A stretch of DNA of 64,000 bases, from NCBI GenBank assembly GCA_965649765.1, contig OZ287757.1, positions 54,250,001-54,314,000 on the forward strand, in the 5' to 3' direction. Shown piece by piece: positions 16,493 through 58,400 of the stretch (position 1 is its first letter; the number at the start of each line of letters is the position of its first letter). Under the pieces are notes generated by a model, which saw only the letters and a program-made list of their open reading frames with translations, searched no databases and was not told the DNA's origin. The stretch is from Bispira polyomma (taxonomy: Eukaryota). The position numbers and the translations under genes were made by a program.

Positions 16493-19400
16493 TCAAGGTC
16501 AAAGCAATCGCTCTGTGGGTATGGTTATCAGTTTACAAAAGTCAGTAATAAAACACTTTACTGGATTGCCACTGGTACTAAGATACAGGAAAATAAAACA
16601 GTGAGAAAAATGGATAATCGTATCCATAAGATATAAGCATTGACATAATCGTGCTATCTTATGGATAGAGGGGGGTGGGGGTGTGTGTATATTGGAAAGA
16701 TGTAGGTAACCATGGTTATTTATGCCATTCCTGTAGATAGGGTAATGTCTGAACTTGCAAGGATTTTAGCTTTCATATTTGGCATCCATATGGTGTCTGT
16801 TTCAGTGACGGTCCATTTTTAATTTGGTGTTAATATACCTAAAAATAAGTGAGAAACAGCAATTTTCTTTTTGGGGATTGTAAGCTTTGATTAAATTGAA
16901 TCACATGATTTTCCGAGCATGCACAGTTGGTCACTCTTGGTTAATCAATACACAAAATGTTGCTAGAGCCTTCCAACGATAGATATTTTCTATGATGTTA
17001 CCGGAAACAGTTACTTCACTTGTCTGGGTTTGCAGTAAAAATACCACGAAAAAAACCATATATTTATTATATGTATCGGGTACACGTTTTCTGTGCCAAT
17101 AATATAAGATATTTTTTATTTTATTCAAATATCAAACATATATACGGCTACTTCTATTTTGGGGTAGCTCACTCTTGACAAAACGAGCCTTTGTAGGCGA
17201 GACGGGCTTGGCTGAAAATCTGCGGATTTTCTGACAAATGACGTCGGTGAAAGTTTTTTTTCTTAGAGATTTTCGGAAACGGCTGCAAAAGATGTCGTCT
17301 TTGAAAATAGAAGATAAAACTAAAACAATGACAATTGGATCCCAAAAATTAAAAAATTTATTACCACAATAATCACATAATTTCGTTTGTTTTAAACTTC
17401 TTATTTACTGATTTTGAAGTATATATATTGTGTACTTCGTTCTAGCTTGCCATAACGCCCGCATACAGTTGGTTATAAGCTTCAATGAATTGATGTCGCG
17501 AAAATATCCTGGTATATGGTGATAGTTTTCTTAATATTTTACTGCATAAAATGGTTCTATATCAATATTTTTGTATCACCAAAAAGCTATTTTATACTTT
17601 TCGACAGTCCAAACAGTTGCCAAATCCAATGAATATTATTTAATTTTTTTTAAGAAATCGTTGTTAAAATCTTAAGTTTTGACATAAATAGGCATTGATC
17701 AAATTATGATTTTTCTGTAAATACCTAAGCTAAAATTTTAAGATTTATATATCATCAAAAAGCAATTTATTCACTTATTTATGGTCCTCTTTACAGAATA
17801 AAATTTCATTGAATATCGACTGAGATAGTGTTCTTTTTATTATGCATACATATTTTACTGTGAATTTTATGTGGCAGTCAAAATTTTATTGTTACAGAAA
17901 TCTGTGTATACTGAACGATCCTTGACCCAGTCAAGCTGAGATCGGTTAGAAACTGATTAAACTTCAAAATATTTAGAAATTAAAACGTTAAAATGACAGT
18001 TTAATACTTCCAAATAAAGTCCGCGTCGTTATGGATGGATTGTATGCTTTAGCAAGACACTTGTTTAATGAAAAACTGAGAGCCGTGAGCGATAATTGAA
18101 GATCGATTTTTACTGATGGTTCGAGATGGTTCACTATTTGTGACTGGTTCACACTTTTTGGACTCGTCGGTAACATGCTGTCGTGGCATCATCATGGTAT
18201 GGCCGCTTTGACAGGGATGGCCAAACTTTTAATTGCCTACATCTCCCTTATTATTGGTTGTAGAGGTTTGGGATGTGAAACCAACCCATAGGAAATCATG
18301 GGCTGGTAATCTTTTGCTGTGGTCAGATTTGACCTTGGAACCCTTATGCAAGGTCAAACAGGTGGGCCACACTTTAAAAGTGCCTATCTTACACTTATTA
18401 TTGGTGACACAGGTTTGCAATTTGAAACCCACTTGTACCATTTTAGGCTTTAGCATGAATGCCCTGTAGGAAATCATAGGCTTCTAGCTTGGGTGCTAGC
18501 TACCGAGGGTGCTTTGTCTTTCTGGTGGATGCAAATATGCATCGATGGGTTAGGTGTAGTTTTCTTTAGGCATAGTAAAAATTTATGGGATAACTTTTAA
18601 TAATAGCTTAATAATTTTGTAATAATGAAAATAATGAAACTGATTTAAACAATATGAAGTTTTATTTGGTTTTGAGATAGATAAAAAATTAAATTTGTTC
18701 TTCTAATTATTGTAAAAATCTTAATTTTACTGAGTATATGGTATATATATAAGTGCCTCCATCTGTTTTTTTGTACCTTCATCTTCTGTAATTATACCTT
18801 TATTTTTGGTGCATGTGCAGGGTTTTTGTATGTGGCCCCCTTATTGTTAGCACTATATTGTACCTCTTTCATATGTACCCCCCTCTATATTTTTGGTACT
18901 TCTTTGTACCTCCAGTCTTGGTAGCCAACACGATGAGAATGAATGCATTAACCCAAACAAGTACATCATGTCATCGAATCAGTCACAAGTAAACGAGGAT
19001 ATCACCAAGACAGCATTCAGCTTCTCTGGTAAAGTAACATTTAGTACTATTGCATTTACGACACATTTATACCAATTTACTCCCGATCATTCGAACTTGG
19101 CTGATCGGCAGAGAATGGGTCATCAATACTGGATAGCATATTATTCACCAGATCATGCCCAGGACACCATACTTTTGGCTTTGTGTATACAGGGCTAACA
19201 CCAGCTAGAACTACCAATAGTGATAGTGACTCATTAGAAGCAATGAAAGCAACGTTAGACAATGTCATTGCATTAATATGGAGTACCAACATTAGCACCA
19301 AGTCCTCTAACAGGGTTGATGTTTCACAAAATATCCTCATTTTAATTTTTGGTACTCTTAAACAAAGGTTTGGTAGTCCAGCCTAAATATATAGTCAATG

Positions 19401-34400: not shown

Positions 34401-37400
34401 ACCCACATCTTATTGTAGGTTGATTTAATATATTTTTTGCATTAAAACGTTAGCTGAAATACATATCCTGCTTACAGCTATAGCTCATGTACATATTGTT
34501 GTATTTTATGTATCACTAGACTCTTTTAAGGTGACGAGCAAAATCAGGTGTTTTTTCCCCAAAAATTTACTTTCGGAAACCGATTATCAATAAAACACTT
34601 GGTCACTACAGTTTTAGCTAAATAAGAGCGATGTTGGTCTTATGTGAAAAACTTAGATAACTTATGAACTGTTTGATATCTAGAGGAAGGCAATTCCACA
34701 CTAGTGTTGTGTGCAAAGAAATATCCTTTTAAGAATTTTTTTTGACTTCTAATACTCCCCAAATTTTGGTTTAATTTTTATTTTGAGGTTACTGCTAAGT
34801 AAATTAATCAGTAATTCTAACATTTGTCTGATGAAATAAACCTCTTGAGTTCACCTATATAATAGAAAAATATTTTAACCATAAATATGTCGCTAATATA
34901 ACATTATTCACGATTAAAATGAGATAATTATATATTTTCATTAATATTATCAATAAATCCCCCCACCCCCTCAAATGGTTCATCTTAGACCCGGACTCAA
35001 AGTAACACTGGCATTAGAAGTCATCTGACTAAAACATGTACTGGTTGACACCCCCCTGCCCCCAAGAGTATAATCTTCTGTAAGGTCACAAGGTGAGCAT
35101 TCACTTAATTGTGTTCTGTTGACAATTCTTTTTCAGCTTGTGAAGATTACTATGGTAACTGTGCATCTATTGCCTTCACCAGTCCTTGGCATTGCTTTGC
35201 CGATGATGATATTAAAGCCAACTGCAGCAGGAGTTGTATCGAGGCCAACTTGTTCTACAGTAAGTTCCAGGGGTTAGACTCGGTCTGTACTGTTCTATTT
35301 ATAGTGTGTTTCTTTGGCGCGGGTGTCTCTTAACCCCTCGAGGACATTGTCTGTTGGTTCGCAGTCCCAACGGCCACTTTTGTCTATTCGCCAGGGTCGT
35401 GTCCATCATCGAGCAGTCGATGGTATATATTGTTGTATAGCCCCCCCGACCCCCCCCCAACCCCTTTCTCCCCCAGAACACAGGAAAATCATAAAAAAAT
35501 GGAAAAAAGTGGGTCAAATTATTTTTCCTATGTAGTAATGTATAGTAATATATAGAATGGTAGAATTACTGTCCATTGGTTATGGTAGGGCCGGCGGTCT
35601 AGTGCATGCGGAGAATCACTGATCTCTCACCAATGTGAGTTAAGATAATGTTCCTTCTGTTACACAGTGGCTTCATAACTGGTTTCTTCCACCATTAAAT
35701 CTGCCCATGACTGAAGCTTTTGAAAGCTACGTGAGCCATAGTAAATTTAAATTTATCATCCAAAAAATCTGTGGCTAACCCCTTTTGACCTCCTTTGATC
35801 ATAGAAACAATCGTGCTTTGCCTTTGTCTTACTATGCCTCCAGTCGTGGTAAAAAAAATTACTGTATAATGTGACAATTTGAAGTGTAACCCTTGGTTCA
35901 GTGAGTGTCCACTATGTCAAGGTTTTATACAGCTGTGTATAATATGGAAATAGCCCACACTTGTGACCATTCATTTTAGTACATTTGCAATGCTGTGAAT
36001 TAAAATATGCAGTCTGATTTTATATATGTTTATTGTACACAAAGATTTTGGCAGCTTTGACTGGACTACAAGTTTTAAAAAAAGTTTCTGCATTTGTATT
36101 TTTTTTTCAAAAGTTGATGCTCCACCTTGTGAAATTGGCACTGTTGTCACAAGTTTGCCGGAGACAACAGCTGCCGCCGCTACAACAGCCGCCGCCGCTA
36201 CAACAGCAGCCGCCGCTACAACAGAAGCAATAACAGTTGCTACCACAGCTGCTGCAACAAATGTGGTAACCACAGGTATGTAAAACTTTTACCAGGTTGT
36301 TGAAATGATAGGCAAAAAAATGTTTTGGGAAGTTTAAAACATGAAAGTGTAACCTCTAAATACCTCGTGTCAAATACAAAGATTCATCAATTAAGCCTGT
36401 CTTAAGCTTCTCTCACTGAAGCTGTTGTTTTCATTCTGAAAAGGTGCACCACCATCTTAAAAAAATAGTATGCAAGGCCCTTCATGGATTGGTTGGAAGC
36501 TGGCAAACCCTCTAAATTTGAGGGGTGTCTGATTAATGTTTGTAGGGGTTACCATTCGGGCCTGAGAATATAGTGGCCATATGAAGGTGGGTGCATTCAC
36601 ACATTGTCCAAAAACATTAAATTGAAGAATCGATCTTTCATGAAACTTCATAAAAATCTAATTTATGTGGCTAACTAATGATGTAAATGATGTCGCCATA
36701 AATAGATTTTGGCACCTTAATGATGTTTTGTTGCATTGTATATCGTCTATAATTCCAGTAACTCCCCAATCTCAGTGTTTGCCGCTTCACTTTGCCTGTG
36801 ACGGCTTTGACGACTGTTCTGGAGGTGGGGACGAGGATCTGACCTGGTGTCAGAGTCAGACGTGTCCCGTGGGTCTAGTCGCCTGCCCCAGTCAAGGTAA
36901 GAACAGTAAAATCCTAATGTATACTTTTATAACACTTAATCTCTGAAAAAAAGAATCCAGGGGCTAACTGTATTCACAAAAAGGTCTTCAGCTTATAAAT
37001 TTGGTCAATGATTTTGGCCAACATGGTTAAGAGTTTGGTCTTAGCTCCTGTAGCAGTACATGGGTTGTCATTAACTTGTCCGATGTCATAAACTTGTCCG
37101 TTTTGGGGGAGCTTCCTTAATGCTAGCAAAAATTTAAAATCCTTGGTAATTTTAGGTAAATATTGTTTTAAGTGAAGTAAACCTGTCTTTTAATTATATT
37201 ATATCATAGCTAATATTTAAGATAACATTTTGATGAAAGCCTAAAAAAAGTGGACAAGTTTATGACCTCAGACAAGTTTATAACAACCCGTGTAAGAATA
37301 TATCTTTTGGATGTAGTCTTAACTTTGCTCATCTTAGCACTACATCTAACACTATAGACAGTCGCAAAACATTAAAGACCTAAATGTCAAACTTAAAACA

Positions 37401-40400
37401 AAGACTTTTTTGTGAATACTGCCTTCATTAACTGCTAGACGTACGTTTTTTTCAGACCTGACAGGACAAATCTCGTGCATTCCGGAGACCTTCCCCTGTG
37501 ACGGGGCGCAAGACTGTCCCTACAATGATGAATCCATTAGCTGGTGTGAGAGCAAGGGTTATGACAAGACATGTTTCGATAGCTGCCACGTACCGTGTCC
37601 AATAAATCGTGAGTATTTTTCAATGAATATGTATATATTAATTTAGTTTGTGTGTTTGAAAACTGATCGGTAGCCTAGAGGTTAGCAAGCATTGCGCTTC
37701 ACAATCACTGGTCTCTCACGTCTGGGCGGCGCGAGTTCGAATCCCGTCGATGCCTATGTGGGAAAGGTGGTAGTTCCTTACTGTGGACCACTGGTTTCAG
37801 TGCAGAACCTTGATCAACTGTATGCAGTGTTTCCTCCAGCGTTTCCAACTACCTGTCCCAATATAACCTACTAAAAGGTACTAGAGTGGACGTTAAATAT
37901 CCAAATTTAAGTTTGAAAACTGATGCAGGGTTCGCAATATATACCAGGCTTTTCAGTATATCGTACATTAGTACATTAAGTGCTTTAAACTTTGGAAACA
38001 AAACTAAAGCTTGCTTGCTTTCTTACTGATGAAGGCAATATATACTGTTTTTTCTGTAGTAAACTGGCGATATATACTGTTATTGCTGTAGTAAACTGGC
38101 AATATGTACCGTAATTTCTGTAGTGAACTGGCAATATATCGTAATTTCTGAGTGAACTGGCAATATATACCGTTATTTCTCTAGTGAACTGGCAATATAT
38201 AGTTGGGGGGGGGGGGGGGGGCTATTAATAAATAAATCAGTTGCGGTCTGACATATACTGTCGCAAAAATGATAGTAATATCATGTTTAAATAGTTTAAC
38301 AGAATATCTGTGGACTTGTAACTATGGCCTAAATTCTACATTATCACTCGACTATCTAATACAACTCACTGTTTTAACAGATTTCATAAGCGAGAGATTT
38401 GTACCAATCTTGCCATAATATTTTAATGTAGTACTGCTAAAATACTGACATTTGGTAATCTAAAAATCTTGCTAAAAGGATGGAGACTGCTGTAAGAAAA
38501 GGGGCATTCATTACAGAAAATATGGTATTTATAAAAACTACATCCAAGACTTGGGCCCCAAATTTCATAGTTTTTTAACTTAGCAGGGTATGTAGGAACG
38601 TTAGGCATTAGACATGCTGAAGACCAAACTTTACAGAGCAGAAAAACCTTGGCCAACTATATACTGTTTTGTGATTTTCTTCACCAGTGAACTGCCCATC
38701 TTGGATGTATGTGGTACAAGACATGTTTAAAATCGAACCGTTGAATCCCAACCTAAATACAAAATAATTCCATTCTATTTCCTACAGCAAATCACTGCAT
38801 GGGACCTTGTAGATAAAAGGGTCTTGATGCTTAAAAACGAAGTAGCACATATACACTCCTGTGACTTCATAATAAGAACCTTTTTACCAGACATGTTTAC
38901 GAATTTACATTTAAATGGTAGCACCTTTATTGTACATAAAAGCTACACTAACGCCGCTTTGGAGATTGTATTGTATGTTGTATTTGTTACACATTCTATA
39001 TTGACGCAAGACATTTACTAAGCGCAACAACACAATGAATTAACCAATTTAGAAGTCAAAAAATAAAAACATAGCTAGGTCATAAGGGGTGTGCAGGGAA
39101 GAACTATAAAAACGGGTACTTTGATGATAGTTTGTCGATCAGTTCTTATCTAAATCCAGAAAGTGTTTCCAGTGATCTAAGCTCAACTTTGAGGAGTATT
39201 CTTGTAACATATTGGCAGCTATTGAGGAAGCTCCAGACCTAGCCTTCTTGGTGGGTTTAATGGAGGAAACATAATGAAGTCTTACCTCTCTTAAGGTTCA
39301 CTAAAGGAAAGACTAGTAGCAAGGTAGGACGGCTGTTGAGACACAACAGCTTTGAAAGTAGTGATTACATGGATTCCAGACAGTGAATCTAATCAATTCT
39401 GTAATGGCGCTTTTTCTCTGTACCAGCCGTTTCTATTGCTCAACACCCAGATTCAGCAGTCGTATTGTGGTAGACAGAAAAAAACGTGTCCTTGTCAGAG
39501 AGGTAGTCTGTGATGGTAGGACTGTGTCAGGCTTTTGATAGATAGGTTTTAAGTTGCTTGCTTCTGAATGTTGAAAGAGAAGGTTAACCACCTGTATGTT
39601 GTGGTGGATGGTTCTACACCTTATGTGGAGCATACTAGAAGCTACAATTGACTTTTGATTTGTGTATGTGGCGATTTAAGGTAGGAACATTGAGGAACAT
39701 TTGTTAGGATTACCACGACAGGTATTGACTTCCGAGAGTAAGAGGGGGCGTGATACGGGCCGAGGTATTTTGGGAAAGCAACTTGATAACCAGTATGAAA
39801 TGTATACATCAAAATTGAACAGAAAGCCAGTGTAAATCTTTTAGAACAGGAGATATGTGGGAATACTTCAAGGTACGAGGTATGTGTGATCATATGAGGT
39901 ATGAGTATTCTGTATTGCCCGAAGGCGAGACTTTTCCTTGTAGACGAACTGCTTAACAATGGTTACAGTAGTCAATGTGACTGTTCACAGGAGCATTTAA
40001 CGAATAACACAACGACAAAGTATGATGTATAGTAATTTTTACTACGATCGGAGGCGTAGTAACACAAATGTGAAGGCTAAAATATCAGGCTTTGAAATGT
40101 GTTCTTCCTATTCTAACAGGACCAATTAAAATTATCACCTAATTCAAGCTGTTTTTACTGCCAAATTTCATTATTGAAGGAACTATATTTATACGGGGCA
40201 TCAATACACTGCAGACAAAATTGGTCTATTTTCGTGTATGTGTGTACACGGTTATTTTACCGAGGCATTCGGCCAATTAGAATCACCGACACTGCCGTGT
40301 CTTGGTAGAATAGCCAAGAACCCTGCAGCTATATCCTGCGACAATCCTTACATTAAAATGATTTGACCAAGCAGTAGCCATAAGATGCACACAAAAAAAG

Positions 40401-43400
40401 TAATTCCTTCTTCTGTATTCAGAGAAATCGTTATTAAGCTTTTTGAAAAAAAATACTAGTAGGAACTTTTCTGGAGAAAGACGAAATTTCTAACCAAAAA
40501 GAGGGCAGATGTCGCCCCATTGTTTCATCCTGCAATATACAATCTATTCAAAGACACCAATGCACTCGAGTAGTGAAGGAGTAGAAACTATAAGTCAATT
40601 CAGCATTTCGAGTGTGCATATATAAATAGCTGTGTGTGTGCTTCGGGATAAACGAACCACTAAAAGCTAACTGAACCAGATCACGTATTTACATTTTCTT
40701 AAATTAAATGTTATAACATACATTGTTGTAAAACTGAACTTATAATCAAGAAGCTTTCATCAAAACCTTTTCTAAGACTCCAATATTGCCTATATTAATA
40801 ATTTATATTAATTGCTTTAAGTTTTTCTAAAATTTTAAAGTAGAAAGAAATTGCCGACATTTTGGCAGATTTTGAAATACTGTCATTATCGGTCACACTC
40901 TGCTATTATTTATCCTGAGTTGGACAATCACACTCGAAATGCTGAATAGGCTTCTTGTGTTTTCACTTTTAATTCATTTTCTAGTTGTGTCTTCTCTCTA
41001 TGTGTTGCAGGTACTGCTGATGTGTGGGAGTGCATCTGGTACGAGTTCCCTTGTGATGGGATTCGCGACTGCTGGAACAGCGACGACGAAAACCTCGCTT
41101 GGTGCGCCTCCGAGAATATCACGCCAACGTGCTATGGCTCGGACAATATTCCTTGTCCCAAACAGGGTAAACATTTGAATTTTATTTTATTATTGGATTT
41201 TAAGTTGCCAGGACTAGTGTTCAGGGAGGGGGAATTAGTGCTGAAGCCACACACTGAACTATGGCAAAGTACTTGACAACACTTTCTCGCATTTTTTGTC
41301 CAGAACTAACATTTTACAGTTAAACAACAAAAAAAGTGTGAAACACTATCAAGTGAGCAGTTAGAAAAATAAAATGTATTATAGGAATGAAAAATACAAA
41401 AGGGAGTTTCATGCGCATTTTAAAACTATCGCTGGGTTGGGTTTAATGCACAAGGCCCAAGTATTTTATTCCTATTCTAAAATGATAAACCATTAATTTT
41501 CATTAAAGTGATACCATGATACCCAAGAACATGTTACTACTAATTAGATGGTTCCATGTTTTGGCTGTTCCATCATGTAAACATACACAACAACCAAGTT
41601 GCAAAAACAAAAAGAAAATGTCTCCAAAAATTGCTGTTTACTTATTAATAACTCAAAAATAACTGCAAGTAAAAAAATTCATGAAATTATAGCCAGAAAG
41701 CTGATTTGGTTGTGATTACTGTGCTTTTTGTTGCATCAAATTTCAACTTTCATTTGTACATCCAACGCCTACTGCTCAAAGATGGAACAGTCATGCTTTT
41801 TCGACATCACTGTTTTATACAAAATTTATACATTGCGTAAAAGGACGTGTTTACGGGCTTAAATGAGCAAGTCTACCATAATTTTAGAATACAGAACACA
41901 CTAGATGGTATGATAACGTGTACCTTGTGTTACATGAAAACCAAAGTTAAACTAGTCAACTTGCTATTGGTATGTGGAAAAAACAAACAGCTCTACACTT
42001 TGTCAATTAATGTACTATCGCATCTCAAAATGACTGGGTATAGAGTCAGGAATCCAACATTCGATACTATATCTGAAACTTGCCAGCCAACTAAAATTAA
42101 AGGAAAATTGGTAAAAACTGACCAAAAAATAACTTGAATTTAAGTCAGTAAGGACAAATTGGTTGCAAAAATCTCGATTTTAGGAAATATTACCCACAAT
42201 TCTACCCAAAACATAACATTTTCTGGGTGGTGAATTTCAGGTACAGTGGCCAATTTTAGATTCCTTACTGTAATAATAAAGTACAGCTATAGAAACCTCT
42301 ATTATACAGCCATGTTGGTAGAACAGGATTTTGTGCAGATAACAGATATGTCATTACTAACCCCTTTTTGACCTTACCTGTGGACTAGCAGTCAACGGTA
42401 AAGTCTATTCACCAGTGCCATGTCTGTCAACAACCAGCAGCCGACACCCCCCCTCTCCCCGACACCCCCCCCCCTCTCCCCGACACCCCCCCCCTCTCCC
42501 CGACACCCCCCCCCCCTCTCCCCCGACATCCCCTCCCCCCGACACCCCCCATAATTTTGTTCAGCTTTCCTTCAGTACAGCACAATTGAAATGGCTTGGT
42601 ATGGTGGAGCTCCCTGAATAAATCCATTGTATATAAGTGCATTATGAAACCCCAGGAATCGCCTGTAGTGAGTGTTTTAATGTCTTTAACTATCTGCAGC
42701 CTTATACCTGGGAATTTCCTTCGATACAAATGTCTATGACTATCGTTAAATTAGTGGCTAAGGGGTTAAAAATGGAAGAGGTAAGTCTGTATAGGACACA
42801 ACAGGAAACCACTACTTTGTGGAAGAGTTGAATAATCGGTTGATAAATTTAATGTTTTAATAACAGTTAATTTCACTTGAACTCCTGATAGAGAGTCGTT
42901 GTACTATACCAAAGGGAAGAAAACGTTGACCCACTTCCATGACGTCACATATGACGGTGTTGCTACCACTCGCAAATTAATACCTAAATTTAATTTTATG
43001 TTCAAATCACTGTACATGTACCTTATCGATTGTATTCCTGTCTGCTGTAGGAGCCATATAATAATATTATATATAGACGTTCACTGCTGGCCGATGGACA
43101 CGATACTGGCTGGTAGAAACGACAGTGGACCGACATTGTCAAAGGGGGGGTTAATCAAGGTTCTGCAGTAACAAATGGAACACAAATATTTATTTTTAAT
43201 CTTTGCAGATGACAGTTTCACTTGTATCCCTGCTTCCTACACCTGTGACGGTTTTGAGGATTGTGCCCTGGGTTCCGACGAAGACCCAGACTTCTGCAAA
43301 AACATGGTTTGTCCAGAAGGCACGAGTCGCTGTCCAGATCAAGGTAAATTCGTTGTTGATTTTCATTTTTTTTTACGTCATATGATGACATATCTGAAGG

Positions 43401-46400
43401 TAATCTCGTGACTAGGTTTCTGTGGTCCCCTAATTAGTATATTACCAATTGTCTACGAGATGTCTAACCAAAACTTCATTCTTCGGTTGTTGGGTAATTT
43501 TGACAATGCCTAGCCCCTTACAACTTCAATGTTCATCAAACATTCCTGCTTGTGTAAAACCTTTCTTATTTTTATTTTCACTCCAATTGGCATCTTTTTC
43601 TTAATTTTCATAAGTTTGCTTACCCATGGACCAGACCTTCCATTTTGGGATATCAGCACCTTAGAGGATGTTTCTCGTCAATTTGGCGTTCTATAAATGC
43701 TACAAGTATATTATTCTTTAGTTAAATCGATGGATGGTGTTCCCCTTGGGAGAATATCCTGGGCCTGTATTCTGGAACGTATACTGAGCTGAAACTCGTA
43801 CTCCACTCAAATATAGACTCTGTGGAAATCCTTGTACATGGAAGTAACATACTTGTGACCATTAATAGAGCTTTTAACCCTGAATTCAAATATCAAGTCA
43901 GATTTTAGATATATTTGACCTATCCAGAGTTATAGAGAATCCAGATTTGAATTAAGTACGAGTTTGAGCTGAGTATACATTTGAGAAAACCAACCCAGGA
44001 AATCAGTTTGTGGCTATAGATCGCATTTATTACATTACATACAGTAGCACCTTTATTATCCAGCTATTTTGTTCTGATAATAGAACGTTTTTAAAATAGA
44101 AGCATTTCAGCAATTAAACAATGGAGAGTGCCACTTTGGGCAGAGTGGATGTGTTTGTATGTAATCGCATATCGGTAAACAGTGGTCTCCCTTGGCCTGG
44201 TGGTTTGACAGTTGGTCTGGTGCTCAGAAGGTTCCCAGTTCAACTTCCAACTGGGAGAGTTTGTCTGGTGATCAAAAGGTCTCTGGTTCAACTTTCACTA
44301 AAAGCCGCTAGGTTCAGTGGTGGGGGCAACATCCTTGGGCAAGATGTGAACATGCCATTGCCTACTGATGATGACCCAGACTATGTTGTTGCAGGGACTG
44401 TCCCTTTTGGAGAATAAGCGGCTTAGAGAATGATATTTCAATAGGGCGCTTTGTAAATAGAAATACTTCAATAATATTAAACAGAAATTTGAATAATAAA
44501 CACTCTGTACTGTGCATTTCTTTCAGAGGATTATGGGACGGTTCAGTGCATTCTGACAGAGTACCTCTGCGACGGTTTCATTGACTGTCTGTATAAACAG
44601 GATGAGAATCCCACTTTTTGTGCCTCTGCAGGAATCCCACTGACCTGTGGTCAGTCAAACACGTTACCATGTCCAGGTGAGAGGATTATGTGAACCCCTG
44701 TGGTCTCCCTTGATATCTGTGAGCATTGCAGTCACAAAAGTTGTAATTTGCTTGTTTGTGAGAGTTTTTGTGGGTGGGTGGGGGCAGGGAGTAGGGGGGG
44801 TGGAGGTTGGCATTTTGTGTCCAGATTTTTTTTCAATTGCATCATCCTTGTCACAGTCTTCAGTCGAACTCGGATCATTAGACACACTTATTGGTTTTTG
44901 GAAAAATCTAAAACCTATATTTTTAATCAGGCCTTTCCATTGTAGTTTCCCTCCTGTACACCCCCACATGCTTCCCTGTGACCTTGCTATGTCCACTGAT
45001 CACATGATTACATCACTGATTCTGCTGTTGCCTAGCATCCATAAAGTGAATTAAAATGCATATTAATAATAATAATCTATGAAATGCTCATTGGAGACCT
45101 ATTATCAATTTTATACAGAATCTATCTAAACTCAAATTCATTCGAATTGCAAAAATGAAAACAATTTCAAAGCAACCACAACATACACTAATACCTCTCT
45201 ACCTGCACTGCAATTATGGTGGCAAGTGCCCTGGTCAGTGGTCGCCTTGATTACTGTAACTCTCTTTTCAGAGGTCTTGCTGGGATTAGCCTGTGCAAAT
45301 TGCAGTCGGTGTGTCCAAAACAGTTTGGTTCGGATAGTAAAGAGAAAGTTTAAGTTTACTCGCATTACTCTTGTTTAAAAAAAAACCTCCACTGGCTGCC
45401 TAAATATTGAGTATAAAGCAATATTTAAAACTGCTATCTTAGTCTATAAATATCTCGATTCAGTTTTCTCTCCATATTTTAGTCCTCACTCTTCTCCCCT
45501 GTACATGTCAATGAAATACAAGGCCTAATAATGATTCTTAAGTGTCCCTACCTTTGTACAATTACTTCACAGGTCAAAAAGACATTTTAACAATAATTTC
45601 TCGTTTTATGTTTCTGTGCTGTAGAATGATCTGCCTCGTGGTAGTTGTAATGCCTCCTCACTTGCTTCCTTTAGGAAAAAACCTACCTACCTATTTAGCT
45701 AGGCTTTTTCACTATAGCCTCGTTACCTTTTCTGTCGTCTCTTTGGTCATAACCTCTCTACGTCCAGTGGCTATATGAAATTGTTAAAATAATGTTCCGT
45801 CTCCTGCGCGTTAGAGTCAGCTAGCACAGAGATAAGCACTGTAAAAGTTATAAAAGTACTTGGTTTTCCAGATGCTCCAACTAACGGGCTGCATTACTGC
45901 ATTAATGAGACCTATTTCTGCGACGGTTACCTGGACTGTCAGGACGGAAAGGATGAAGAACTGGCAGAGTGCCAAAAACTGGGAGTCACGCCTAAATGTT
46001 ATGATGAGGATGAGATCCTATGTCCCAAGCCAGGTGGGTTCAGTATACAGCCACATATTGCTTTTGTTTGAATTTTGAAAGTGATATCTGGATCCGATTC
46101 GGTCTAACTTGCATGTTCGGGAAAGTCCGGAAATTCATGAAAATATTATATCGCCTGCAAAGTAAAAACTATGTGCAAAAATATATTGTTTTGGGGGTAA
46201 TTTTGTTGTTTATACAAATTCAAAAAAAATAAAGCTACCTACCTAGTAGAATTTTTCATATTTTGACACTTTCATCAGTTTTAATTAATTTTTTTGCGAG
46301 TCACCATGGCTGACACGGCTGTAGTATGACGCAATTTCATTGGTTCAGACATTGACTGTTTCAGTGATTTTTATTGGCTGAACACACGTATAGCGACTGA

Positions 46401-49400
46401 CTAACCTCTAGTACAATATTGCCACAAAGTTGGACTATATGGGGTTTTCACTAAAACTAGGATGGACCTAAAGAATTTTATTACATTAAATTGCATACAT
46501 GCACACGCAGGTAGAATTGTATATAAAGGCTAGCCTCGCTTAAATGATGAAAAAAATTGTACTTTGAATATGTAAGTGGCTTGTATATACACCATTGACG
46601 GGTCTTCCCAAGCTGAAGGTACTTGGGTAGTGAAGGATATTTGTTTATTTAGATATGTGTAAATAAAATGAACTACAATACTCCTATATTCATTATTTAT
46701 AAAATGTTTTTATTAGTATTTGCAGAAGATCGAAAGTTTAGTCCAAACGGCTTTTGAAAATGGGGTTCGGAGCCGATTTAATAAGATTTGCATGTTTGGC
46801 AAATTCATCAAAATATTATATATTTATCCAACATATTAAATTGTTTTTTTTATCGGGTTTCAAGCTAGATTATGTAAAAAAAAAAAAATTATTGAAATTG
46901 TTTTTATGGTAATTTCGTTGATTATACAAAGAAAACAAATTGTTAGCTATCTTTAATTTTAAGCTACGTTATATTTTCATTTTTGTCTGTTGGCTTGTTC
47001 TCTAGAATCTTAAAAAATATGTGCCCAGTTTGAGACCATGCTTTCCATATACATCCAATTGAAGATATGTGACCAATTGTTGTGAAATTCAACAAGAGTT
47101 GTCTTTCAAAAAATAACATACGCACAGTGTGAAATACACCATAATATATATATGGCCACCATAGAATGGAAACATCAGCCTTTCGCCTGATGAAATCCCT
47201 AAATGGTAATAAATGTGTGACTCTAATTTCTCATCTAGATGACTATGGGATGGTGGTGTGTAGTTACGCCCACTTTGAGTGCACTAATTATACATACTGC
47301 CCCACGATGACAGAGGACGAAGAGTTCCAATTTTGCAGTAACCTGGAATGTCCTAGAGCAGATGCACTCTGCCCCGGTACAGGTAATTATGACTTTCTTC
47401 CTTGTTTATGCACACTGGCCTCCCACCTTTATAATATATATATGGTCCCGGTTTCGAATCTTGTTAGATTAGTTAGGGTTAATTATTTGGTCAAAATGAC
47501 AGGCCATCAGCAAGCCCTTCTGTTGAGTTTCATGAGATTTTGTTTAATGGAATTGTTGAAATATTGGCGTATTACCATTATAATCGCCACGATGATGACC
47601 TTGAAATGACCTGAGCCGTATCAAAACTCTGCATTAGTTTATTCAATTGACCCTGGTTTCTTATATGCTCACAATGCTTTACAAAGAGCCAAATTCCTAT
47701 TTTGTAAATGCTTGTAACCAAATGAACTGATAATCCAAGAAACCTTTTACAACCTAGCCTTGCAACCTGTATGGTCCCAGGTTCGAATCTTTGCTTGTTC
47801 ACCCATTTAAATTATTTTAAGTATTTGTCAATTTTTCATTCATCAAATATGGGTCAATTGGTACTTAAAGGTAACTTAGTCATTTTTCAAAAGACATTTG
47901 TTTGCCTTGGCTTCGAAAACCATACATTTTGTTTACACTAAAATGATATTCTGACAATAAAATTGTCTTTTGATGCATTAGTTTTATTTTTTTAAATTTT
48001 GGTAAATGTATTATATCTTATAACAGGTATTTCTTTGATCTCGCCATGGACTATTACATTTGTAGTTTAATTTCATTGACAACTGTCTTTCCCTGTTAGA
48101 AGTCTTGGCCGTTTCTAAACGGCTATTCGGTCGCAAAATGGCAAGTATTATGTTAACCTTCACAATTTCTTTAAAAATTGTAATGACTACTAGTGCGAGT
48201 AGGGTTAGTGCCTCGTATAATTAGTAATGACTTCTAGTGAGTGGGATTAGTGCCTCGTAAAATTAGTAATGACTTCTAGTGAGTAGGGTTGGTCCCTCAT
48301 ATAATTAGTAATGACTTCTAGTGAGTAGGGTTGGTGCCTCATATAATCAGTAATGACTTCTAGCGAGTAGGGTTGGTCCCTCATATAATTAGTAATGACT
48401 TCTAGTGAGTAGGGTTAGTGCCTCATATAATTAGTATTGACTTCTAGTGAGTAGGGTTAGTGCCGCCTATAATTAGTAATGACTTCTAGCGAGTAGGGTT
48501 AGTGCCTTATATAATTAGTAATGACTTCTAGTGAGTAGGGTTAGTGCCTCATATAATTAGTAATGACTTCTAGTGAGTAGGGTTAGTGCCTCATAGGTGC
48601 CCTTGAGGTGCTTAAGCGGAAACAAGTTATTATAATGTACACACTTATACACTAGGATGTTTAATGCTATACAAAATGTTCTTGTTACCCAGACGACTGG
48701 CGCCAGTGTCTGCCATTTTATTGGGCATGTGATGGGCTGCAGGATTGTCACTATGGAAGTGACGAAGATCAAGACTGGTGTAACAATATGACCTGTAACC
48801 CTGGATACGTCAGCTGTCCAGGGCGTAAGTATACGTCACATGGTTCTTTACTATACAACGCCATACCAGTTTAATGTAGCTCTCATCGGCACACAGGAAT
48901 TCAGCATATGTGGTATGGGTGCTTTAAATGTAAAATTAAATATACGTTTCAATTTGTGAGGTCACCAGTTGTAGCAAAGACAAACGTATTCTCCCTTGGT
49001 ATAGTAGATTTTAATCTCCATCGGTGACAAAGGGGTTAATGCAAGAAATTCAACAATTAGTATTAAAAGTTCAATGTTTCAGTTCACAATGTGTGCCAAA
49101 AGTTTATTGTAATACACACCAATGGGTCTGCTTGCTACTTTCTCATTCCCAGTAGTTAATGCCGACTAAAACGCATTTTAACACTATTTTCTCATGATGC
49201 ACCGAGGCTGTGGATTGATCTGCCTCGTGATATTTGCACTGCCTCCTCACTTGCCTGTTTTAGATCAGATACTGTAAAGGCAGGCGACCGCACATAATAT
49301 TAAAAATTTTCAATATCAAGCCATTTCCATAAATGTCCTCTGTCCATGTAAATGAAAATAAAATAGGACATTTGATATACTGCACTTATACAACACAGGG

Positions 49401-52400
49401 TCGTTCCAAATGCACTTAACTCATGGGCAGCCATAATGAGCGCCGTGCCATGGCTTGCTTGAAGATGACTATTTATCAGTGTCCCCAAGGATCTTTAATC
49501 TGCCACAGGAGATCAATGCAGAGGACCGCCATTTTAAGTGGTCATCCAAGCCACTAGGAAAACTTGTGTTCACATCTTGTTATGTCACTAAATGAAACCA
49601 GCGGCCTGTACCGGTATTAGAACCAGGGACCTTCTGATCATCAAACCAATGCCCTCGCCACTAGGCCACGGAGATCACCGACCACGGGGAGGACATGTCA
49701 CATCTATATATCCATCTGTCCATCTTCAGTCACTTACTCTTTCCCTGTGATAGTGGTTGGTCTGTTGTTTGTTGTCTGTTTATTTGATTATATATCCATC
49801 TCTCCATTTTTATGCCTTCAGCCACCTACTCTGGCCACCATGAGTGTATCATTCACATTTTAATCTGTAATAGGTAGTGTGACTATCTCCCCATCTGTGT
49901 CTATTTTGTCCATCTATCTCCCCATCTGTGTCTATTTTGTCCGTCTATCTCCCCATCTGTGTCTATTTTGTCTGTCTATCTCCCCATCTGTGTCTATTTG
50001 TATTCTTTCAGTCACCTACTCTGGCCTCCCCGAGTGTATCGATCCCTCCTCCCCCTGTGATGGTAACTATGACTGTTACTACAGCGATGATGAAGACGTC
50101 TCCTGGTGTCTATCTGAAGGTTACGAGCCTCACTGCAGCCAAGAGGGCACTATCGCCTGCCCTTACGACGGTAAGTCCAGGACTTTTATTATTACACCAC
50201 AACCTCCATTGTCAAAACTGCTGCTGTTCAATTTTTAATGAATTCAGTTTTATGAACTCGATCATTGCAACGGTAACTCAAGTGGACCGTGGTGGCCTAG
50301 TGGTGTTAGCACTTGCTTCACAATCACTGGCCACTTACCGAATGTGGGTTGGAATCCCATAGTTTGTTCTTTTATTAGTGGGATAGTTTGTCAAGAACTT
50401 GCCACAGGCCGGTGGTTTACAGTGGTTTCGCCTAAGCTGTTAAAAGCGACATCAAATCCAAGTAAATTCAAATATATTAAAAATTGTAAATTAGTGACGT
50501 TTTCTTCCAGTTAAAATTTTAACTTGTACAGTTAGTATTCAATTTGATGAACACAATTTCACTCTTCCGAATTTTTATTTTTTTCCTGTTTCTTCCAAAT
50601 TGATACTTTTTTCCTTTTTTGCTTTTTTAAAGTGAACTTTCTAATACTATCCAAAACACAATCCCTCCTCCACCCCCAAGATGCTCGTTTATAATAGGAC
50701 GATTCTACTGTACAACTATAACACCTTATTTCACACTTGTGCGGTGTCGTGTGCCGTGTGGGATCTTTTCTCGATAGACTCCATTGGCAACCTATCAAGT
50801 ACCGCATTGTTTCGAAGACCAATGTTTAAGTCAGTCAGTCCCCATATCTTGCCTCTTTGCCTGTCTTACTGCAGCCTTACCAAGGGGGAAAACAGAATCT
50901 CATTCTCTGATACCAGAACCATTAAATGGATTGGAGTCTATGCCTTCTCTGTCACAGCACCTGAACCCTATGGAATAATTTACTAGCCAATATATAGGAT
51001 CCCAGGAAACCCCTCTTGTTTCAAGAGCAATTTTAAGACCCATTTCTTTACCCTCGCTTACCCTCGATAGACATTTTTTTCCTCCATGTCGCCCCCCCTC
51101 CTCCCATCACGAATTTGCAATCTGAAGACTTCAATTTTAACAACTTTGTCAATGATGTGGCTCTTTTGGCATCAATAAGAAGCGTTACAAAAATCTATTG
51201 TGTACTTTATATATCAGATTATTCTGTCTGCGAAATAATGACCAAAATATTGTGTTGCGTGACTATATACTAGCTAAAACCTTCCGACCAAAAACAATTA
51301 CTAATATCTATGATGTCCGCCCAATAATATGCAGTAAAATATGTCAATTCATGAACTTAATTCATTATTATTTGGAATATAACACAAGACGCCTTCGGCA
51401 TTTTCCGTTTACTTCTTGTTTAAATATTGATTGATTGAGCAATGAAAATAAAAATGTAGATATATACAGACACTGATAACCAACAGTTAAAAAAATCACG
51501 GTTTTCAAAAAAGTAAGACCATGCCGGAATATATTTTAAATATGTTTTACTGCATTAAATGGCCCTATGTATGCTTCAAGTCGATGGAACTTTACTATTA
51601 ATTCAATATACATACTACCAGTACCACCTACAGGAGGTTATATTTTGATTTTTGTCCGTTGGTTTATATTTGTGACCGCTTCAGCGGCTACTGAGCCCTT
51701 GTTCGGTCTATATGTGCAGAATACAGCTGGGAAGTGGACTGTATTAATGCCACATATCCCTGTGATGGAATACAAGACTGTTACCTGTACAGCGATGAGA
51801 ACGTCACCTGGTGTAATGAGCAGGAAATTATACCAAAGTGTTTCTACAACGACACCATATTTTGTATACAACCTGGTGAGTGGGTAATATATGTGTACTT
51901 GTTGTATATTGATCTAGTGGCTAGGGTGTAAGTCTGACGATGAGTTGGTCCGGGGTTCTATTCCCAAAGTAATATCTGTGTAATATCAGCGCATTAAACA
52001 CGTGTTTATGAAAACCATGGTGATTCAGGTGGCGTTGTAGCATATCGTTTAAAAAAAAAAATTATTATTAGTAATATGTTTGATTAAAAAAAAGTTGTAA
52101 CTATCTACCAACTAACTATCCAGAATCTTAAACATAGGTCACTGTAATTAGCATGCTAACCCTGTATTATCCTAGATTTACCGAATAGAAGTCAGGCTTT
52201 TACTACAGTCTAGTGCCAAATTGGTATTGAAATGTACACCTTTTTTGAAGGTATTGTTGCATTTTCTATGTAAAAAACCGGTCGCCGTGTTGGCCTAGTG
52301 GTTAGAAACGCCTGCATTTACAATGACTGCCCTCTCACCAATGATGTGCGACATCAATCCCGTTCGTCCCTTAATGTGGGAAAGGTTTGTCAGGTCCTTG

Positions 52401-55400
52401 CCGTAGGTTGGTGGTTTACACAGTGGCTTTAGCTCTGGTTTCTTCCACCATTGAATCTGTCTGTCGCAATATGACCTACGCTTGTTGAAAACGACGTAAA
52501 ATGCAATTTTTTATAAAATTGCAACAGAATAAATTTGCTTTGTTTCCTGATCCTGTTACCTTTTTGTATTTTTTTGCAAGTGTATTTCTGGAACATTTGT
52601 TACAATCTATTGCAATACATATATTGTGAATGCAACTGAAATATCAGTGAAACCACAGTGGGCAAATATGACTGTTAGGCTTTTTTAGTTGCTATATATT
52701 TAATGCTATCATTTTCTATTTAAACAATACTAGCATTTCCTAATAAAAAAAACACAAGAGAAATCCAACAAAACCAGCTAAATTGATTCTCCGCCTTACT
52801 AATGAAAGAAGTAACTGATTACGCCATTACAGACAGATATCTGATGCAAATAAACAGGAAAAAAAATTAAAACAAAGAGTTGTCGTTGAAAATAAGACAA
52901 TTGGGCATACGGTGTCAAATACACTGATGCTGATCTGGCCACTATAAACGCCAGTGTGACGGCGTTATGAATGTGTCCATTTTATCCCTGTCACTCATTT
53001 CCATGCTTGTTATTAAATAGATGTTTTACCACAGATGCACCCCATCAAGTATTAATCTGACGCCCCTCAGTTTGGCCGGGTCGATTGCTTCCCACCAATC
53101 CACGCATGCCTTTACATAATATTGCTAAGACGGTGGCGCCCTTTTCAGAATCTAAACAAAATCAGGCCTTGGCAGGTAAAAGCCGAATAAAGAATCCCAT
53201 GACGAGACTAGCCCCCTACTATCTGACATTTCTAAGCCATTTTCTGTATTTTGGGGGATGTTCGACAGATGAGACTGTGAATTGTGTGCTGCTCGACTGG
53301 GTGTGTGAAGAAAAGGAGAATTGTCCACAGGGAGAAGATTGTACAGATCTGAGCTGCCGAGAAGGACTAACTGAATGCCCTAATCTAGGTAAGTTATGTG
53401 TGTGTGTTGTATAATAATATAATTATACTTTCCATTTTTAACATGCACAAGTCCCCTAACAAAACAGAAGCAACAATCAATCAATGGACCTAATTTTCCC
53501 TATAATTTTGTCCATATTGAACGCATTTCATTTCAATAAATAATTGATTTTTATATGTACAATTGATTTTATCTTAAGGCGTTTGTGTTATGTCATTTGT
53601 CCACCCATTCATTATTCTGAAATGAGCCATTTCTTATCAAAACGTTGTGTCTGGGGTTAGGTTGTTAAGGTATATACAACTCCTACAAAATAAAAAGGTT
53701 TTGTTTTTTATAAACAATAAATATGGGAGTATTTTAAATTTAAGATTAAAACTAAAATGATGAAAATTTAAAAAAAATTACCTTATATGTACACATGGTT
53801 TAGTTGGTTTTAATTTCTTCAACCCATCCAACAAAACATGGCCATGTCAGTGTGGTCTCTGATGGATCTTAATAAAATTGTCACAATACCAAAGATTCTA
53901 CCCTAAAATTAAATTAAAATGTGTTCGATGAGATGCCAGACCTGTGAGTTTTTCGTCTGTAAGTTAATATTTCATTAAGTCACTCTGACTTTAGCCAACA
54001 AAACAGGCTTGTGACAGCATTGATTGTATGTTCTATGGGATATTAGACCTTCAAGTTTTTTATCTCTGAAGAGGGGGCATTTGTAAAGTAATGTTTTATG
54101 AAGTAAGTTGCCTTTGGAAGTTTTCGTGGGCAAAAATATGAGAAGGTTATTCCATGTTTACTACTAGTGCTGTGATAGCTTTTAAAAAACGATGTCTGGA
54201 GCCGATTCATATAAATGCGCAGTTTCGGCAATTTCTGAAATTGTCCCTCTGGTAAAGTAAATGTTTCGATGAGATTTTAAAGCAAAAATTATATGAACAA
54301 GAAGTTATTGAAATAGTTTTTAGGGTAATTTGGTTGTATACTACAAAATTATAATGGCTAGCTATAATTTGAATGATTTTAGTGTTTGCTGCAATGCTTT
54401 CCAGACATAGGCAAAAAGCGATGTGTGACCACTTAGCAGTCACGGGCTTTTTTGTTAGTGACTCCACAGCCATCTCTAGCCGATTACCGAAAACTTTTTC
54501 GTTCAGTTCCCGGCGATGGTTCTCTCATGGGGGTCGAATCAGTTAACCATTCGTGTGTAGTGCTATTGTAGATAGATCCTAATGGTCACCTGTCCCCTTC
54601 TGTTTTTGCAGACAATATAATGTACTGTGTGAATGAGAGTTACATTTGTGATGGTATCTGTGACTGTCTCAACTGCACAGAGGAGAACATGACTTGGTGT
54701 ATTGAGGAGAATTACCCATTGGAGTGTTACTTTAGCGATGAGATAACCTGTCCATTGAGCAGTAAGTATTGTATTCAGATTTATACTTGGCACATATATC
54801 TACCTTCCTCTGGTATTCAGAGTGGTAATTAAATCTTTCCTGACTGCAACAGTCAACTGCCTCATTTACTGTGATTCCCCTAACTGAAAAGCTCTAGAGG
54901 CTTGAGGGTGACGCCATTTATCAAGGATCTTCAGCCCTGCCACTGTCGATAGGGACCCAGTGATAGGGGACCACCATTTTAAGTGGTCATTCGAGCCACT
55001 CGGCAGACGTGTACACATCTTGCCCAAAAATGTTATCCTACCAATGAAACTAGCGGCCAGTACCGTGAAATAGAACCCAGGACCTTCTGATTATCAGACT
55101 AACTCCCTTACCACTAGGCCACGGGGGACCACTATGTAACCTTTTTGAATGGAATCTAATCCAATCTAATCTTTTATCATGCTTATCTGTGTGCCAGCAG
55201 ATTCTAAGGCGCACAAGACAGAAAATCATTTTGACAATCTTGTATAGCCTTTGGACGAACAGGGGTTGTGACCATGTAGGTGCCGGAAAAAAGGTCAGGA
55301 GGCAAAGGTGGAAAAGCCTTGCTAAATAGTTATGTCTTCAGCTTTATCCTAATACAGGCAAGTGAGGAATCAGTACGAATCCAATGAATCTACTCCTGAC

Positions 55401-58400
55401 CGGGGGAGAGCATATAAATCGAATCTCAGCCGAGGTGGGACTATATACTGTTCAATCTTTACATTTTATATCGGTTTCTCTCTGTATATTGTTCACAGAT
55501 GACGTCACTGGGTATGAGCTGTACTTCCAATGTATTCCACCCCAGTGGGCTTGCGATGGCTATGCCGACTGCCCCGATGAAACTGATGAAGACTTTGACT
55601 GGTGCATGTCACTCCCCTGTGACGATTACTTCGTCCCCTGTCCAGGTAAGATTGTTGACAAACATAATACATCTGTGTGTTAACAATTTTAAAATGTTTG
55701 GCTACGCAATGCCTGTAAGCATGTCTTTCGTATGGAATGTTTTAAATCTGCAAAAAACATGCAGTATAATGCTCGGTAGGTTGTTTACGCTCTCCCATCA
55801 GTCTCCCTTGACCCTATTCTGTTTTTAAACTTAAACATCTTGGCAATTTCCCGACCGATTTTAATGCAACAAAAAGCACAGTAATCGCAATAAAGGTAAG
55901 CTTTCTCATCTTTCTCAGCGAATTGTTTTGCACAGGTATCGAGACTTATTTTAACAAATAATAGTGATACAGGAACTATTTTCAAATGTTACAAATGCTA
56001 ACTTTTGCTGCTTTTTAATGGGTTTGTTTATTAAATAGAATGACGGTACTTCACTGTCTAAACAGAATCCGAAACACTAATCCATGAAAATAGGACACTT
56101 AGCGATACGGACACACTTTTAGGTGCTTCAGTAATCTAATCTAAATACCTCTTTTGGGATGGGTGTTCAATTTTCCTTGAGAGAACTCCAATCATCATTA
56201 TTAGCATCCTAATTATAAGGCCAAAGTCGTAATAAAAGAGGGATATAGCCGTAGTAGTTTACAAATTAGCATTCAAGTCCAGAGGAAAGGAAGGCAACAT
56301 TAAAATGGCCTGGTGTGATGTGACTTGGGATGCTTTCTACAAAAGGGTCAATGCTCGGTGATTAATGGGTGGTGGGGGGTGAAGCCCTAAAATAGGGAGT
56401 CTCCAAGACTTGACCATTTGCGAAAAACTAGTCTAACCCCTTTAAGTAGAACTCCATTCATCTTTTATGTGGGTTTTTGCATGATTATGCCAATGCTTAT
56501 TGGCATAATCGTGCTTTCCCGGGGAAAGAGGGGGACAAATAGGGGTAAACCCTTGGTTACACATGGCAACTATATGTCGACAGGGTCATCTCAGAACTCG
56601 CAAGGATTACCGCTTTCATATTTGACGTACATATGGAATCTGTTTCAGTGACGGCCCATTTTTTAATTTGAAGTCAATATTGCTAGAAATAAGTCAGAGA
56701 TCTCCATTTTCTGTTTAGGGATTGTGAGCTTCTATTGAAGGGCCTATCACCACCCATTTCCGGTTTCTCGGTTTCTAGAACGATGTCATCAGCTGGTTGA
56801 TTCATCGATAGTTTTTGTGAATGGTAGTAAAAAAACGTAGTAAGGTCACATGATCTTCCGCTCATGGGCAGTGATGCGATTAATACATCTTTGTAAAGAA
56901 ATTGTTGTAAAAACCTTAAAAGTTTTGAGATCAATAGGCATTGATCAAATTATGATTTCTCTGTAATTACTTAAACTAAAATTTTATGATTTATTTATCA
57001 TGAAACAGCAATTAATACACTTTCTGACCCTTTTTACAGAATAAAATTTTATTTAATATTCACCGAGACACAAGTCTGTATATTGTACATACATATTTTA
57101 CTGTAAATTCTATTTGGCAGTCATTTTTTTTTTAAGAAATCTGCGTATACCGAACGATCAATCTCCCAGTCAATGAAATATGAGCTGAGATCTGTTAGAA
57201 ACTGTGATTAAACTTCAAAATATTTCTGATGGATGGATTGTATGTTCTAATTTGCATCTGTTACACGGCTGTAGGCAATTCTAAACGGTCGGTAATTCTG
57301 AACGAAAATACAAATAAAATCCACCTACTGTAATTTTGAAAGCAACCATTTAACACCAGTAAATGTACATGCTATTATATTCTTTTCGACCAAATTTTCC
57401 ACTTTCTATCAATATTTTCAATATTATCAACAAATATAAAACACTTATTGGTTTAAGTCCTATTTACCAGCTTGTGTCGACAAACAAAATGACGTCATCA
57501 ACATCTGTTCAGAATTTCTGTCTTTGCTATTTGACAGTTTTTAATACATTATTTGACACTTCTCTATTGAAAAACAGGGATATACAAGTTTTGAAACAGG
57601 TACCTAAATAAAATAAGTATTCTTATTTATTTAGTGCCTTTTTAATGCATTTTGTCCCGAATTTTGCAAATTTAACGAAAAATCGTTCAGAAATGCTGAT
57701 GACCGTGTAACAAAAATCTCTATAACCACCACTCGTCTCGAAAACGTAAATTGCTTATATCTATCGTCAAACGTCCTGTTAGTGTACGCTTCCTGTTAAC
57801 GGACACCAGTTCTGCTAGCAAATCTCTTATTTTGGGATTTAAAATTAAAATGAGGATGAAAACATAACAGCATTCTCTAATCTTTTATTTTGTATTATCG
57901 CCCATTAAAGACCGACTCTGTAGCGACTGTATCCTTGTCAATTTCGACGGCTAACTAGTGACTGGGTCACTATTTTCAGACTACGGCTTTGTTGTGGCAT
58001 TATCATGATATGGCCGCCAGGCCATTCTCCTCTTGTCTGACTGTTGTTGCAAAAATGCCTTTTTAGGGTAAATGTTTAAAATCGTAATTTAGACTTTGAG
58101 ACCACTTGGGTATTTGTCTTTCTAACATCGGTAAAACGGCTTTTATTAATCAGTCTTTATTTATGATGGCTGAATTACAGAGTCGACAAGTGAAAACCTT
58201 TATTTTTGTCCAGTTTGTAAAAACATAGAGTGTAGGATTACATGATACACGGATGTTTATACAGTAAAACTTCTATCATCCGAACTGATTCTGATGAAGT
58301 AATTGCCACGCCCCCTAAAAATGTTTTTTCCCTATTGTTTTGTACAGAAAACCATGTTCTATTTTATAAACCTTTCTATTTATCCAAACAAAATCTTTCT

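What the first reader, a model, noticed from the sequence alone, without database searches (positions are those of the whole stretch)
36759..55645. Thirteen LDLa-like repeats in permuted register: C3-C4-C5-C6 then C1-C2, with orphan half-modules at both ends
Seen: each of 13 symmetric phase-1 exons encodes CI-x5-CDGxxDC-x4-DE-x4-C followed by C-x6/7-C, i.e. the C-terminal two-thirds of an LDLa module and then the N-terminal hairpin. The array starts at C3 directly after the Thr/Ala linker, with no preceding C1-C2. It ends on C1-C2 (CDDYFVPCP) before a Cys-free tail. The C2-to-C3 distance across exon junctions is 8-14 aa and variable, like an inter-domain linker, and an aromatic residue (W/F) usually precedes C6. 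Known: canonical LDLa is C1-C6 with disulfides 1-3, 2-5, 4-6, a C2-C3 gap of about 4 aa, and phase-1 introns at module boundaries. Inference, three options: (a) each exon is an autonomous circularly permuted LDLa fold; (b) 12 canonical modules form across exons and the terminal halves complement each other to close a ring; (c) the halves pair between molecules to build disulfide-linked protease polymers.
Basis: partly seen in the sequence, partly recalled or inferred. Interest (0 to 1): 0.9.

Follow-up and report, generated by a model that had tools for sequence, protein, structure and literature searches.

The report
Protease with half-shifted LDL-receptor repeats
An invertebrate secreted zinc-protease gene carries 13 LDL-receptor-type modules whose two halves come in swapped order; paralogues in the same genome still have the normal order, so the gene may show a common calcium-binding module turned into a circular permutant by loss of its end exons, but neither the RNA nor the disulfides have been checked.

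Summary
Thirteen phase-1 exons each encode LDLa C3-C6 followed by C1-C2, inside an M12B/ADAMTS-CR/ShK protease gene, and no exon supplying the missing halves was found. An old paralogue (C6:40.36-40.39 Mb, roughly 25-50% non-Cys identity, now carrying one stop) has the same trimmed ends and also ends in a basic tail. Other paralogues on C6 have the same mid-module exons but open with a whole canonical module, and at least one also closes with one; a more distant C11 paralogue also opens that way. The trimmed state is therefore probably derived, by loss of two in-frame exon blocks (permutation by duplication). The end halves keep their cysteines and core residues. C2-C3 gaps are longer in trimmed genes (mean 9.5 against 7.5). 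AlphaFold folds exon 1 alone as a permuted module (pLDDT 83), which shows feasibility only. Best reading (about 45%): the whole array folds in shifted register. Main rival (25%): 12 normal modules with leftover halves. No RNA was available. The scan had noted this gene's architecture and tail before; I found no note of the permutation on other DNA.

The parts
8137..8272 (+). exon with the likely start codon and signal peptide
   Evidence: hydrophobic N-terminus, inferred
9352..12927 (+). prodomain exons (9352-9563, about 10549-10623, 10904-11075) and first catalytic-domain exon (12756-12927)
   Evidence: similarity to paralogue C6a
13741..21155 (+). M12B reprolysin exons; intact HExxHxxGxxH split over 15845-16009 and 18916-19028, Met-turn in the latter; other boundaries approximate
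23266..32056 (+). ADAMTS_CR_2-like cysteine-rich exons (23266-23422, 31081-31197, 31993-32056)
   Evidence: weak Pfam PF17771, below cut-off
35137..35259 (+). ShK-like domain exon, phase 1-1
   Evidence: E 0.003, below cut-off
36114..36275 (+). Thr/Ala linker exon; its one Cys is probably ShK C6
   Evidence: same P-x-C in paralogues
36759..36896 (+). repeat exon 1 (short type); starts at C3 with no upstream C1-C2
37456..37608 (+). repeat exon 2 (long type), one extra Cys
41011..41166 (+). repeat exon 3 (long)
43209..43343 (+). repeat exon 4 (short)
44527..44676 (+). repeat exon 5 (long)
45872..46033 (+). repeat exon 6 (long)
47239..47382 (+). repeat exon 7 (short, degenerate calcium loop)
48693..48824 (+). 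repeat exon 8 (short)
50012..50170 (+). repeat exon 9 (long)
51720..51875 (+). repeat exon 10 (long)
53269..53388 (+). repeat exon 11 (short, degenerate, C5-C6 gap 5)
54612..54761 (+). repeat exon 12 (long), two extra Cys shared with paralogue C6a
55499..55645 (+). repeat exon 13 (short); ends on C1-C2
59399..60129 (+). putative last coding exon: 242 aa, Cys-free, basic (K+R 69, D+E 42), single copy in the genome
   Evidence: no RNA support

Best explanation
Shown: a secreted M12B metalloprotease with ADAMTS-CR and ShK domains and a Thr/Ala spacer carries 13 exon units C3-C6/C1-C2, without the outer halves. Inferred history: an ancestor with canonical ends had a phase-1 intron in the C2-C3 loop between two modules; the symmetric exon spanning one junction expanded in tandem; then the leading block (exons A'-B-C) and the closing block (Y-Z), each phase 1-1, were lost in frame. 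Inferred mechanism: with no upstream hairpin, the C3-C6 core of exon 1 completes itself with the C1-C2 strand that follows it. That uses up the partner of core 2, and the shift runs down the chain. The result is 13 circularly permuted, mostly calcium-binding LDLa modules (C3-C1', C5-C2', C4-C6) in which the old C2-C3 loop is the inter-module linker. The acidic array probably serves as a docking arm for basic ligands or substrates.
For: Paralogue C6a is colinear (15 units against 13) and also starts at C3 after a linker exon and ends on C1-C2 before a basic tail exon. C6b is canonical from first C1 to last C6; C6d, C6e and the more distant C11 paralogue carry the opening exons A and C. No remnant of A, B, C, Y or Z lies in the trimmed genes' end introns. 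The first cores rank 9th and 3rd of 41 for consensus fit and share 10/21 residues, equal to the best internal pairs; the last hairpins keep [VI]-P-C-P. C2-C3 gaps average 9.5 (25/26 at least 8) in trimmed genes against 7.5 (6/13) in genes with canonical starts, p 6e-4, not independent of descent. AF2 on exon 1 gives pLDDT 83 in the best model (81-83 in all five), with only two strands, 6-8 (C3-L-P) and 39-41 (before C2), the pairing expected for a permuted module; its core matches LDLa at 0.6-1.0 A over 21-27 columns in the best rows. Arrays that open at C3 are rare elsewhere (4 of 1795 cores) and none clearly ends on C1-C2.
Against: No transcript and no disulfide data. With 11 sequences AF2 gave no LDLa fold for exon 3 (pLDDT 64). 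Homologous exons sit in C6b, where only the canonical register satisfies all cysteines. The last hairpins are a little more divergent than average (z -0.7, -1.2) and the within-exon against cross-exon co-decay test was inconclusive (rho 0.22 against 0.00, p 0.29). C6a has a stop in unit 5 and a degenerate zinc motif. All comparison is within one genome.
Confidence: 0.45

Rival explanations
1. Twelve canonical LDLa modules form across exon junctions with long hairpin loops. The N-terminal C3-C6 piece and the C-terminal C1-C2 piece are leftovers that pair locally (C3-C5 with C4-C6; C1-C2) or stay loose.
For: All solved LDLa arrays are canonical (own knowledge; one search lists them). C6b has the same exon type and closes only in canonical register. 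Gaps of 8 or more occur in 92 of 1749 database modules. Any loss of end blocks gives this pattern automatically.
Against: Four surplus cysteines, the acidic calcium residues and the core hydrophobic residues of the end halves are kept in two genes about 60% diverged. Both ends are trimmed, which in this model doubles the free cysteines.
Confidence: 0.25
2. [quoted passage not shown]
For: It satisfies all standard cysteines and explains conserved end halves. The terminal-domain concept is described in PMC6863430.
Against: It needs contacts across about 600 residues when an equivalent partner lies 4 residues away. The number of units differs between paralogues (13 and 15). No direct support.
Confidence: 0.1
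3. The end halves pair between molecules and build disulfide-linked dimers or polymers of the protease.
For: Conserved end halves; the array has an odd Cys count of 81, so at least one thiol is free or intermolecular.
Against: The odd Cys is in exon 2 and is absent from the C6a counterpart. Local pairing during folding in the ER would compete. No direct support.
Confidence: 0.08
4. The gene model is incomplete: unrecognised exons supply the missing halves, or the real 3' end lies beyond the window.
For: No RNA run was available; DNA beyond the window could not be fetched.
Against: The 5' introns (483 and 587 nt) and the C6a 3' intron (938 nt) are short and hold no such exon. Both genes have an in-phase basic tail exon next. 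Genome searches with the closing exons found nothing near this locus.
Confidence: 0.12

Closest known systems
LDL receptor class A module (Pfam PF00057), tandem arrays of megalin/LRP2, VLDLR, LDLR
   Same: C3-x6-C4-D-x4-C5...DE...C6 core, acidic calcium motif, short C6-C1 linker; model core superposes on solved LA modules.
   Different: The array starts at C3 and ends at C2; C2-C3 gap 8-14 against 4-5 in 86% of database modules; introns sit in the C2-C3 loop; attached to a soluble M12B protease.
Saposin/swaposin, permutation by duplication (PMC3320104)
   Same: A disulfide-rich tandem repeat loses its outer halves and leaves a unit in swapped order; untrimmed relatives exist.
   Different: Different fold. 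Here the trimmed product is a 13-unit array made by exon loss, trimmed and untrimmed paralogues share one genome, and the permuted fold is not yet shown.
Tandem domain swap, central and terminal domains (PMC6863430)
   Same: The exon unit equals the central domain: C-half of one module, linker, N-half of the next.
   Different: Described there as a misfolded state, with no experimental structures in the PDB as of 2019; here it would be the native state.
ADAMTS-like M12B reprolysins with ShK domains in invertebrates
   Same: Signal peptide, prodomain, HExxHxxGxxH, Met-turn, ADAMTS_CR_2, ShK.
   Different: No thrombospondin repeat was seen. It has an LDLa array and a basic tail; I found no paper describing this architecture.

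Membership tests
LDLa module (PF00057) | Sequence match to the family profile | tested here: met
   4 of 8 exons over the cut-off, the other 4 at E below 0.005, profile positions 12-37 only.
LDLa module (PF00057) | Six cysteines in order C1-C6 in every module | tested here: not met
   Met for 12 cross-exon readings, not for the first core or the last hairpin.
LDLa module (PF00057) | Acidic calcium cage (D after C4, D before C5, DE before C6) | tested here: met
   Present in 11 of 13 units including exon 1; degenerate in exons 7 and 11.
LDLa module (PF00057) | Disulfides 1-3, 2-5, 4-6 in canonical register | not testable with these tools
   No coordinates returned and no joined construct allowed. 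C4 and C6 are lost together in module B of C6b and C6d, which fits 4-6.
Natural circular permutant | Halves in swapped order relative to the parent family, both outer halves absent | tested here: met
   Genomic level only, in two paralogues.
Natural circular permutant | The swapped unit folds on its own into the parent fold | tested here: inconclusive
   AF2 pLDDT 83 with a deep, partly canonical alignment; 64 and no LDLa match with family-only sequences.
Natural circular permutant | Transcript confirms the trimmed ends | not testable with these tools
   Only DNA-like runs found; no splice joints.
M12B reprolysin | HExxHxxGxxH and Met-turn | tested here: met
   HELGHNLGSQH across 16009/18916, Met-turn in 18916-19028; Pfam Reprolysin hits on the single exon lie below cut-off.

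The most novel reading that the evidence does not exclude
A natural circularly permuted LDLa module that makes up a whole 13-unit array, produced by exon-block loss, with trimmed and untrimmed paralogues side by side in one genome, so that the ends of an array set the folding register of all its disulfide modules.
Probability: 0.45. Interest if true: 0.8.

Novelty: new variant of a known kind. Interest (0 to 1): 0.64.

Why it matters
LDLa is one of the commonest extracellular modules, and my two paper searches found no permuted form. If the exon folds alone, LDLa arrays can adopt a second register. [quoted passage not shown] The paralogue pair makes the question testable with 45-residue and 90-residue constructs. 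If the canonical rival is right, this is an unusual protease architecture with shifted introns and the interest falls to about 0.3.

Tried and rejected
RNA evidence: only three unlabelled runs, which cover introns and show no splice joints, so they are taken as DNA. Full-length relatives: the representative search returned only ordinary LDLa arrays, none with the HE[x]GH zinc motif; exon-sized searches returned megalin-like exons, nothing, or one cysteine-rich exon of this family on an ENA contig that ends 2.3 kb later; the metagenome hit was weak. AF2 with 11 sequences was uninformative. The co-decay test was inconclusive and the tree of 41 units largely unresolved. Rejected: the linker Cys as an orphan partner (it fits ShK C6); the aromatic before C6 and the 10-residue C5-C6 gap as signs of permutation (common in canonical arrays). 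Left out: any search or fold of the joined spliced protein; exons were searched one by one by reference.

Full report
Observation. Six-frame translation found 11 clear repeats, and a profile and a splice-site scan added two degenerate ones. All 13 exons between 36759 and 55645 are phase 1-1 with AG/GT ends. Each reads C-x6-C-x5-C-x10-C, then x4 or x8, then C-x6/7-C. Pfam aligns each tested exon to positions about 12-37 of Ldl_recept_a, that is C3 to C6. The C2 to next C3 gaps are 8, 10 or 14, and W or F precedes C6 in 11 of 13. The array has 81 cysteines: one extra in exon 2, two extra in exon 12. The window has no N.

The gene. Upstream lie a signal-peptide exon, prodomain exons, an M12B catalytic domain with an intact HExxHxxGxxH and Met-turn, ADAMTS_CR_2-like exons, a ShK-like exon and a Thr/Ala linker exon. 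The linker's one cysteine fits as the last ShK cysteine and is present in paralogues. The 483-nt intron before exon 1 and everything from 55646 to 64000 hold no exon that supplies the missing halves. A phase-1 acceptor at 59399 opens a single-copy, Cys-free, basic 242-residue frame. No RNA could test the joints. The joined protein was measured only in local scripts and was not searched or folded.

Paralogues. The window is G000:C10:54.25-54.31 Mb. The genome holds at least nine loci with the cysteine-rich exon and several related arrays. C6a (C6:40.36-40.39 Mb) is colinear with the window in its order of short and long units (15 against 13) at roughly 25-50% non-cysteine identity. It also goes from a linker exon straight to C3 and from a last C1-C2 to a phase-1 basic tail exon of unrelated sequence. 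It has a stop in unit 5 and a degenerate zinc motif, and I found no cysteine-rich or ShK exon in it, so it may now be inactive; the stop was read as X. In contrast C6b (71.69-71.72 Mb) opens with a whole C1-C6 module (exon A), continues through exons B and C, then through the same mid-module phase-1 exons, and closes with exons Y and Z on a whole module. C6d opens the same way, with A' as its own phase-1 exon. C6e and C11 have matches to exons A and C, and C11 is more distant from the window than C6b is on the cysteine-rich exon (43% against 67%). By parsimony the canonical start is ancestral. Blocks A'-B-C and Y-Z each begin and end in phase 1, so each can be lost in frame in one step. This matches the permutation-by-duplication route described for saposin and swaposin (PMC3320104). 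The history is inferred from one genome and a rough outgroup.

Which register folds? For the shifted register: the first cores rank 9th and 3rd of 41 for consensus fit and share 10 of 21 residues, as well as the best internal pairs; the last hairpins keep both cysteines and [VI]-P-C-P, although they are slightly more divergent than average. C2-C3 gaps average 9.5 in the trimmed genes and 7.5 in C6b and C6d (p 6e-4, not independent of descent), against 4-5 in 86% of database modules. AlphaFold on exon 1 with an 81-sequence alignment gave pLDDT 83 and pTM 0.60, with only two strands, at C3-L-P and just before C2, which must pair with each other. The core superposes on solved LA modules at 0.6-1.0 A in the best rows, while 41-column alignments to tandem pairs give 6.6-11 A, as expected if the tail folds back.

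Against it: that alignment was half made of ordinary arrays cut at the same place, and the profile matches megalin and VLDLR across their module borders, so the model shows only that a 4-residue C6-C1 link can close the fold. The family-only run on exon 3 failed. Homologous exons sit in C6b, where only the canonical register satisfies every cysteine. The co-decay test did not separate the registers.

Weighing. Conserved, complementary trimming with undecayed ends is better explained if the halves are folded, and the nearest partner for core 1 is its own exon's strand. Taking it forces every later core to do the same. I put this at 0.45; canonical modules with leftover halves at 0.25; an incomplete gene model at 0.12; a ring at 0.10; polymers at 0.08. 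These are judgements, not computed values. The function of the array is inferred from the family: an acidic, calcium-dependent docking arm (D+E 106 against K+R 13) held away from the protease by a mucin-like spacer.

Comparison and verdict. The units work like LDLa modules and match the family by sequence, but the end units fail the C1-C6 order. [quoted passage not shown] Paper searches found neither a permuted LDLa nor this protease architecture; the library is incomplete. The organism was not identified. Verdict: a real feature and a new variant of a known kind, with a cheap decisive test. Interest 0.64; 0.8 if the permuted fold is confirmed.

Noticed in passing
window 23800-27830: Retrotransposon in the intron between two cysteine-rich exons: reverse transcriptase (PF00078), RNase H and a recombinase-like frame, in several frames; looks DIRS-like (that last label from own knowledge).
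   Followed up: partly
window 54612-54761 and L034 (C6:40389289): An extra cysteine pair around C5 is kept in both paralogues, suggesting a fourth disulfide in that unit.
   Followed up: partly
window 59399-60129 and L035 (C6:40393560): Both trimmed genes end in basic hydrophilic tails of unrelated sequence (242 and 143 aa), opposite in charge to the acidic array.
   Followed up: partly
L043:1241-1408 and L049 (C6:70321654): Module B of C6b and C6d has lost C4 and C6 together, a conserved four-cysteine LDLa variant.
   Followed up: partly
L033-L034 (C6:40.36-40.39 Mb): Paralogue C6a has a degenerate zinc motif, no cysteine-rich or ShK exon that I could find, a TAG in unit 5 and short tandem partial copies of exon starts in its introns.
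   Followed up: partly
L038-L040 (C2:7.41-7.42 Mb), L045-L046 (C6:70.24-70.25 Mb): Partial copies of the 3' part of the C6b-type array, with no protease exons found in the DNA fetched.
   Followed up: no
window 54700-55400 and 55664-59366: The introns around exon 13 are filled with high-copy repeats; the single-copy tail frame begins just after them.
   Followed up: no
window 11828-12231 and 21116-21556: Short tandem repeat arrays in introns that give spurious long ORFs.
   Followed up: no
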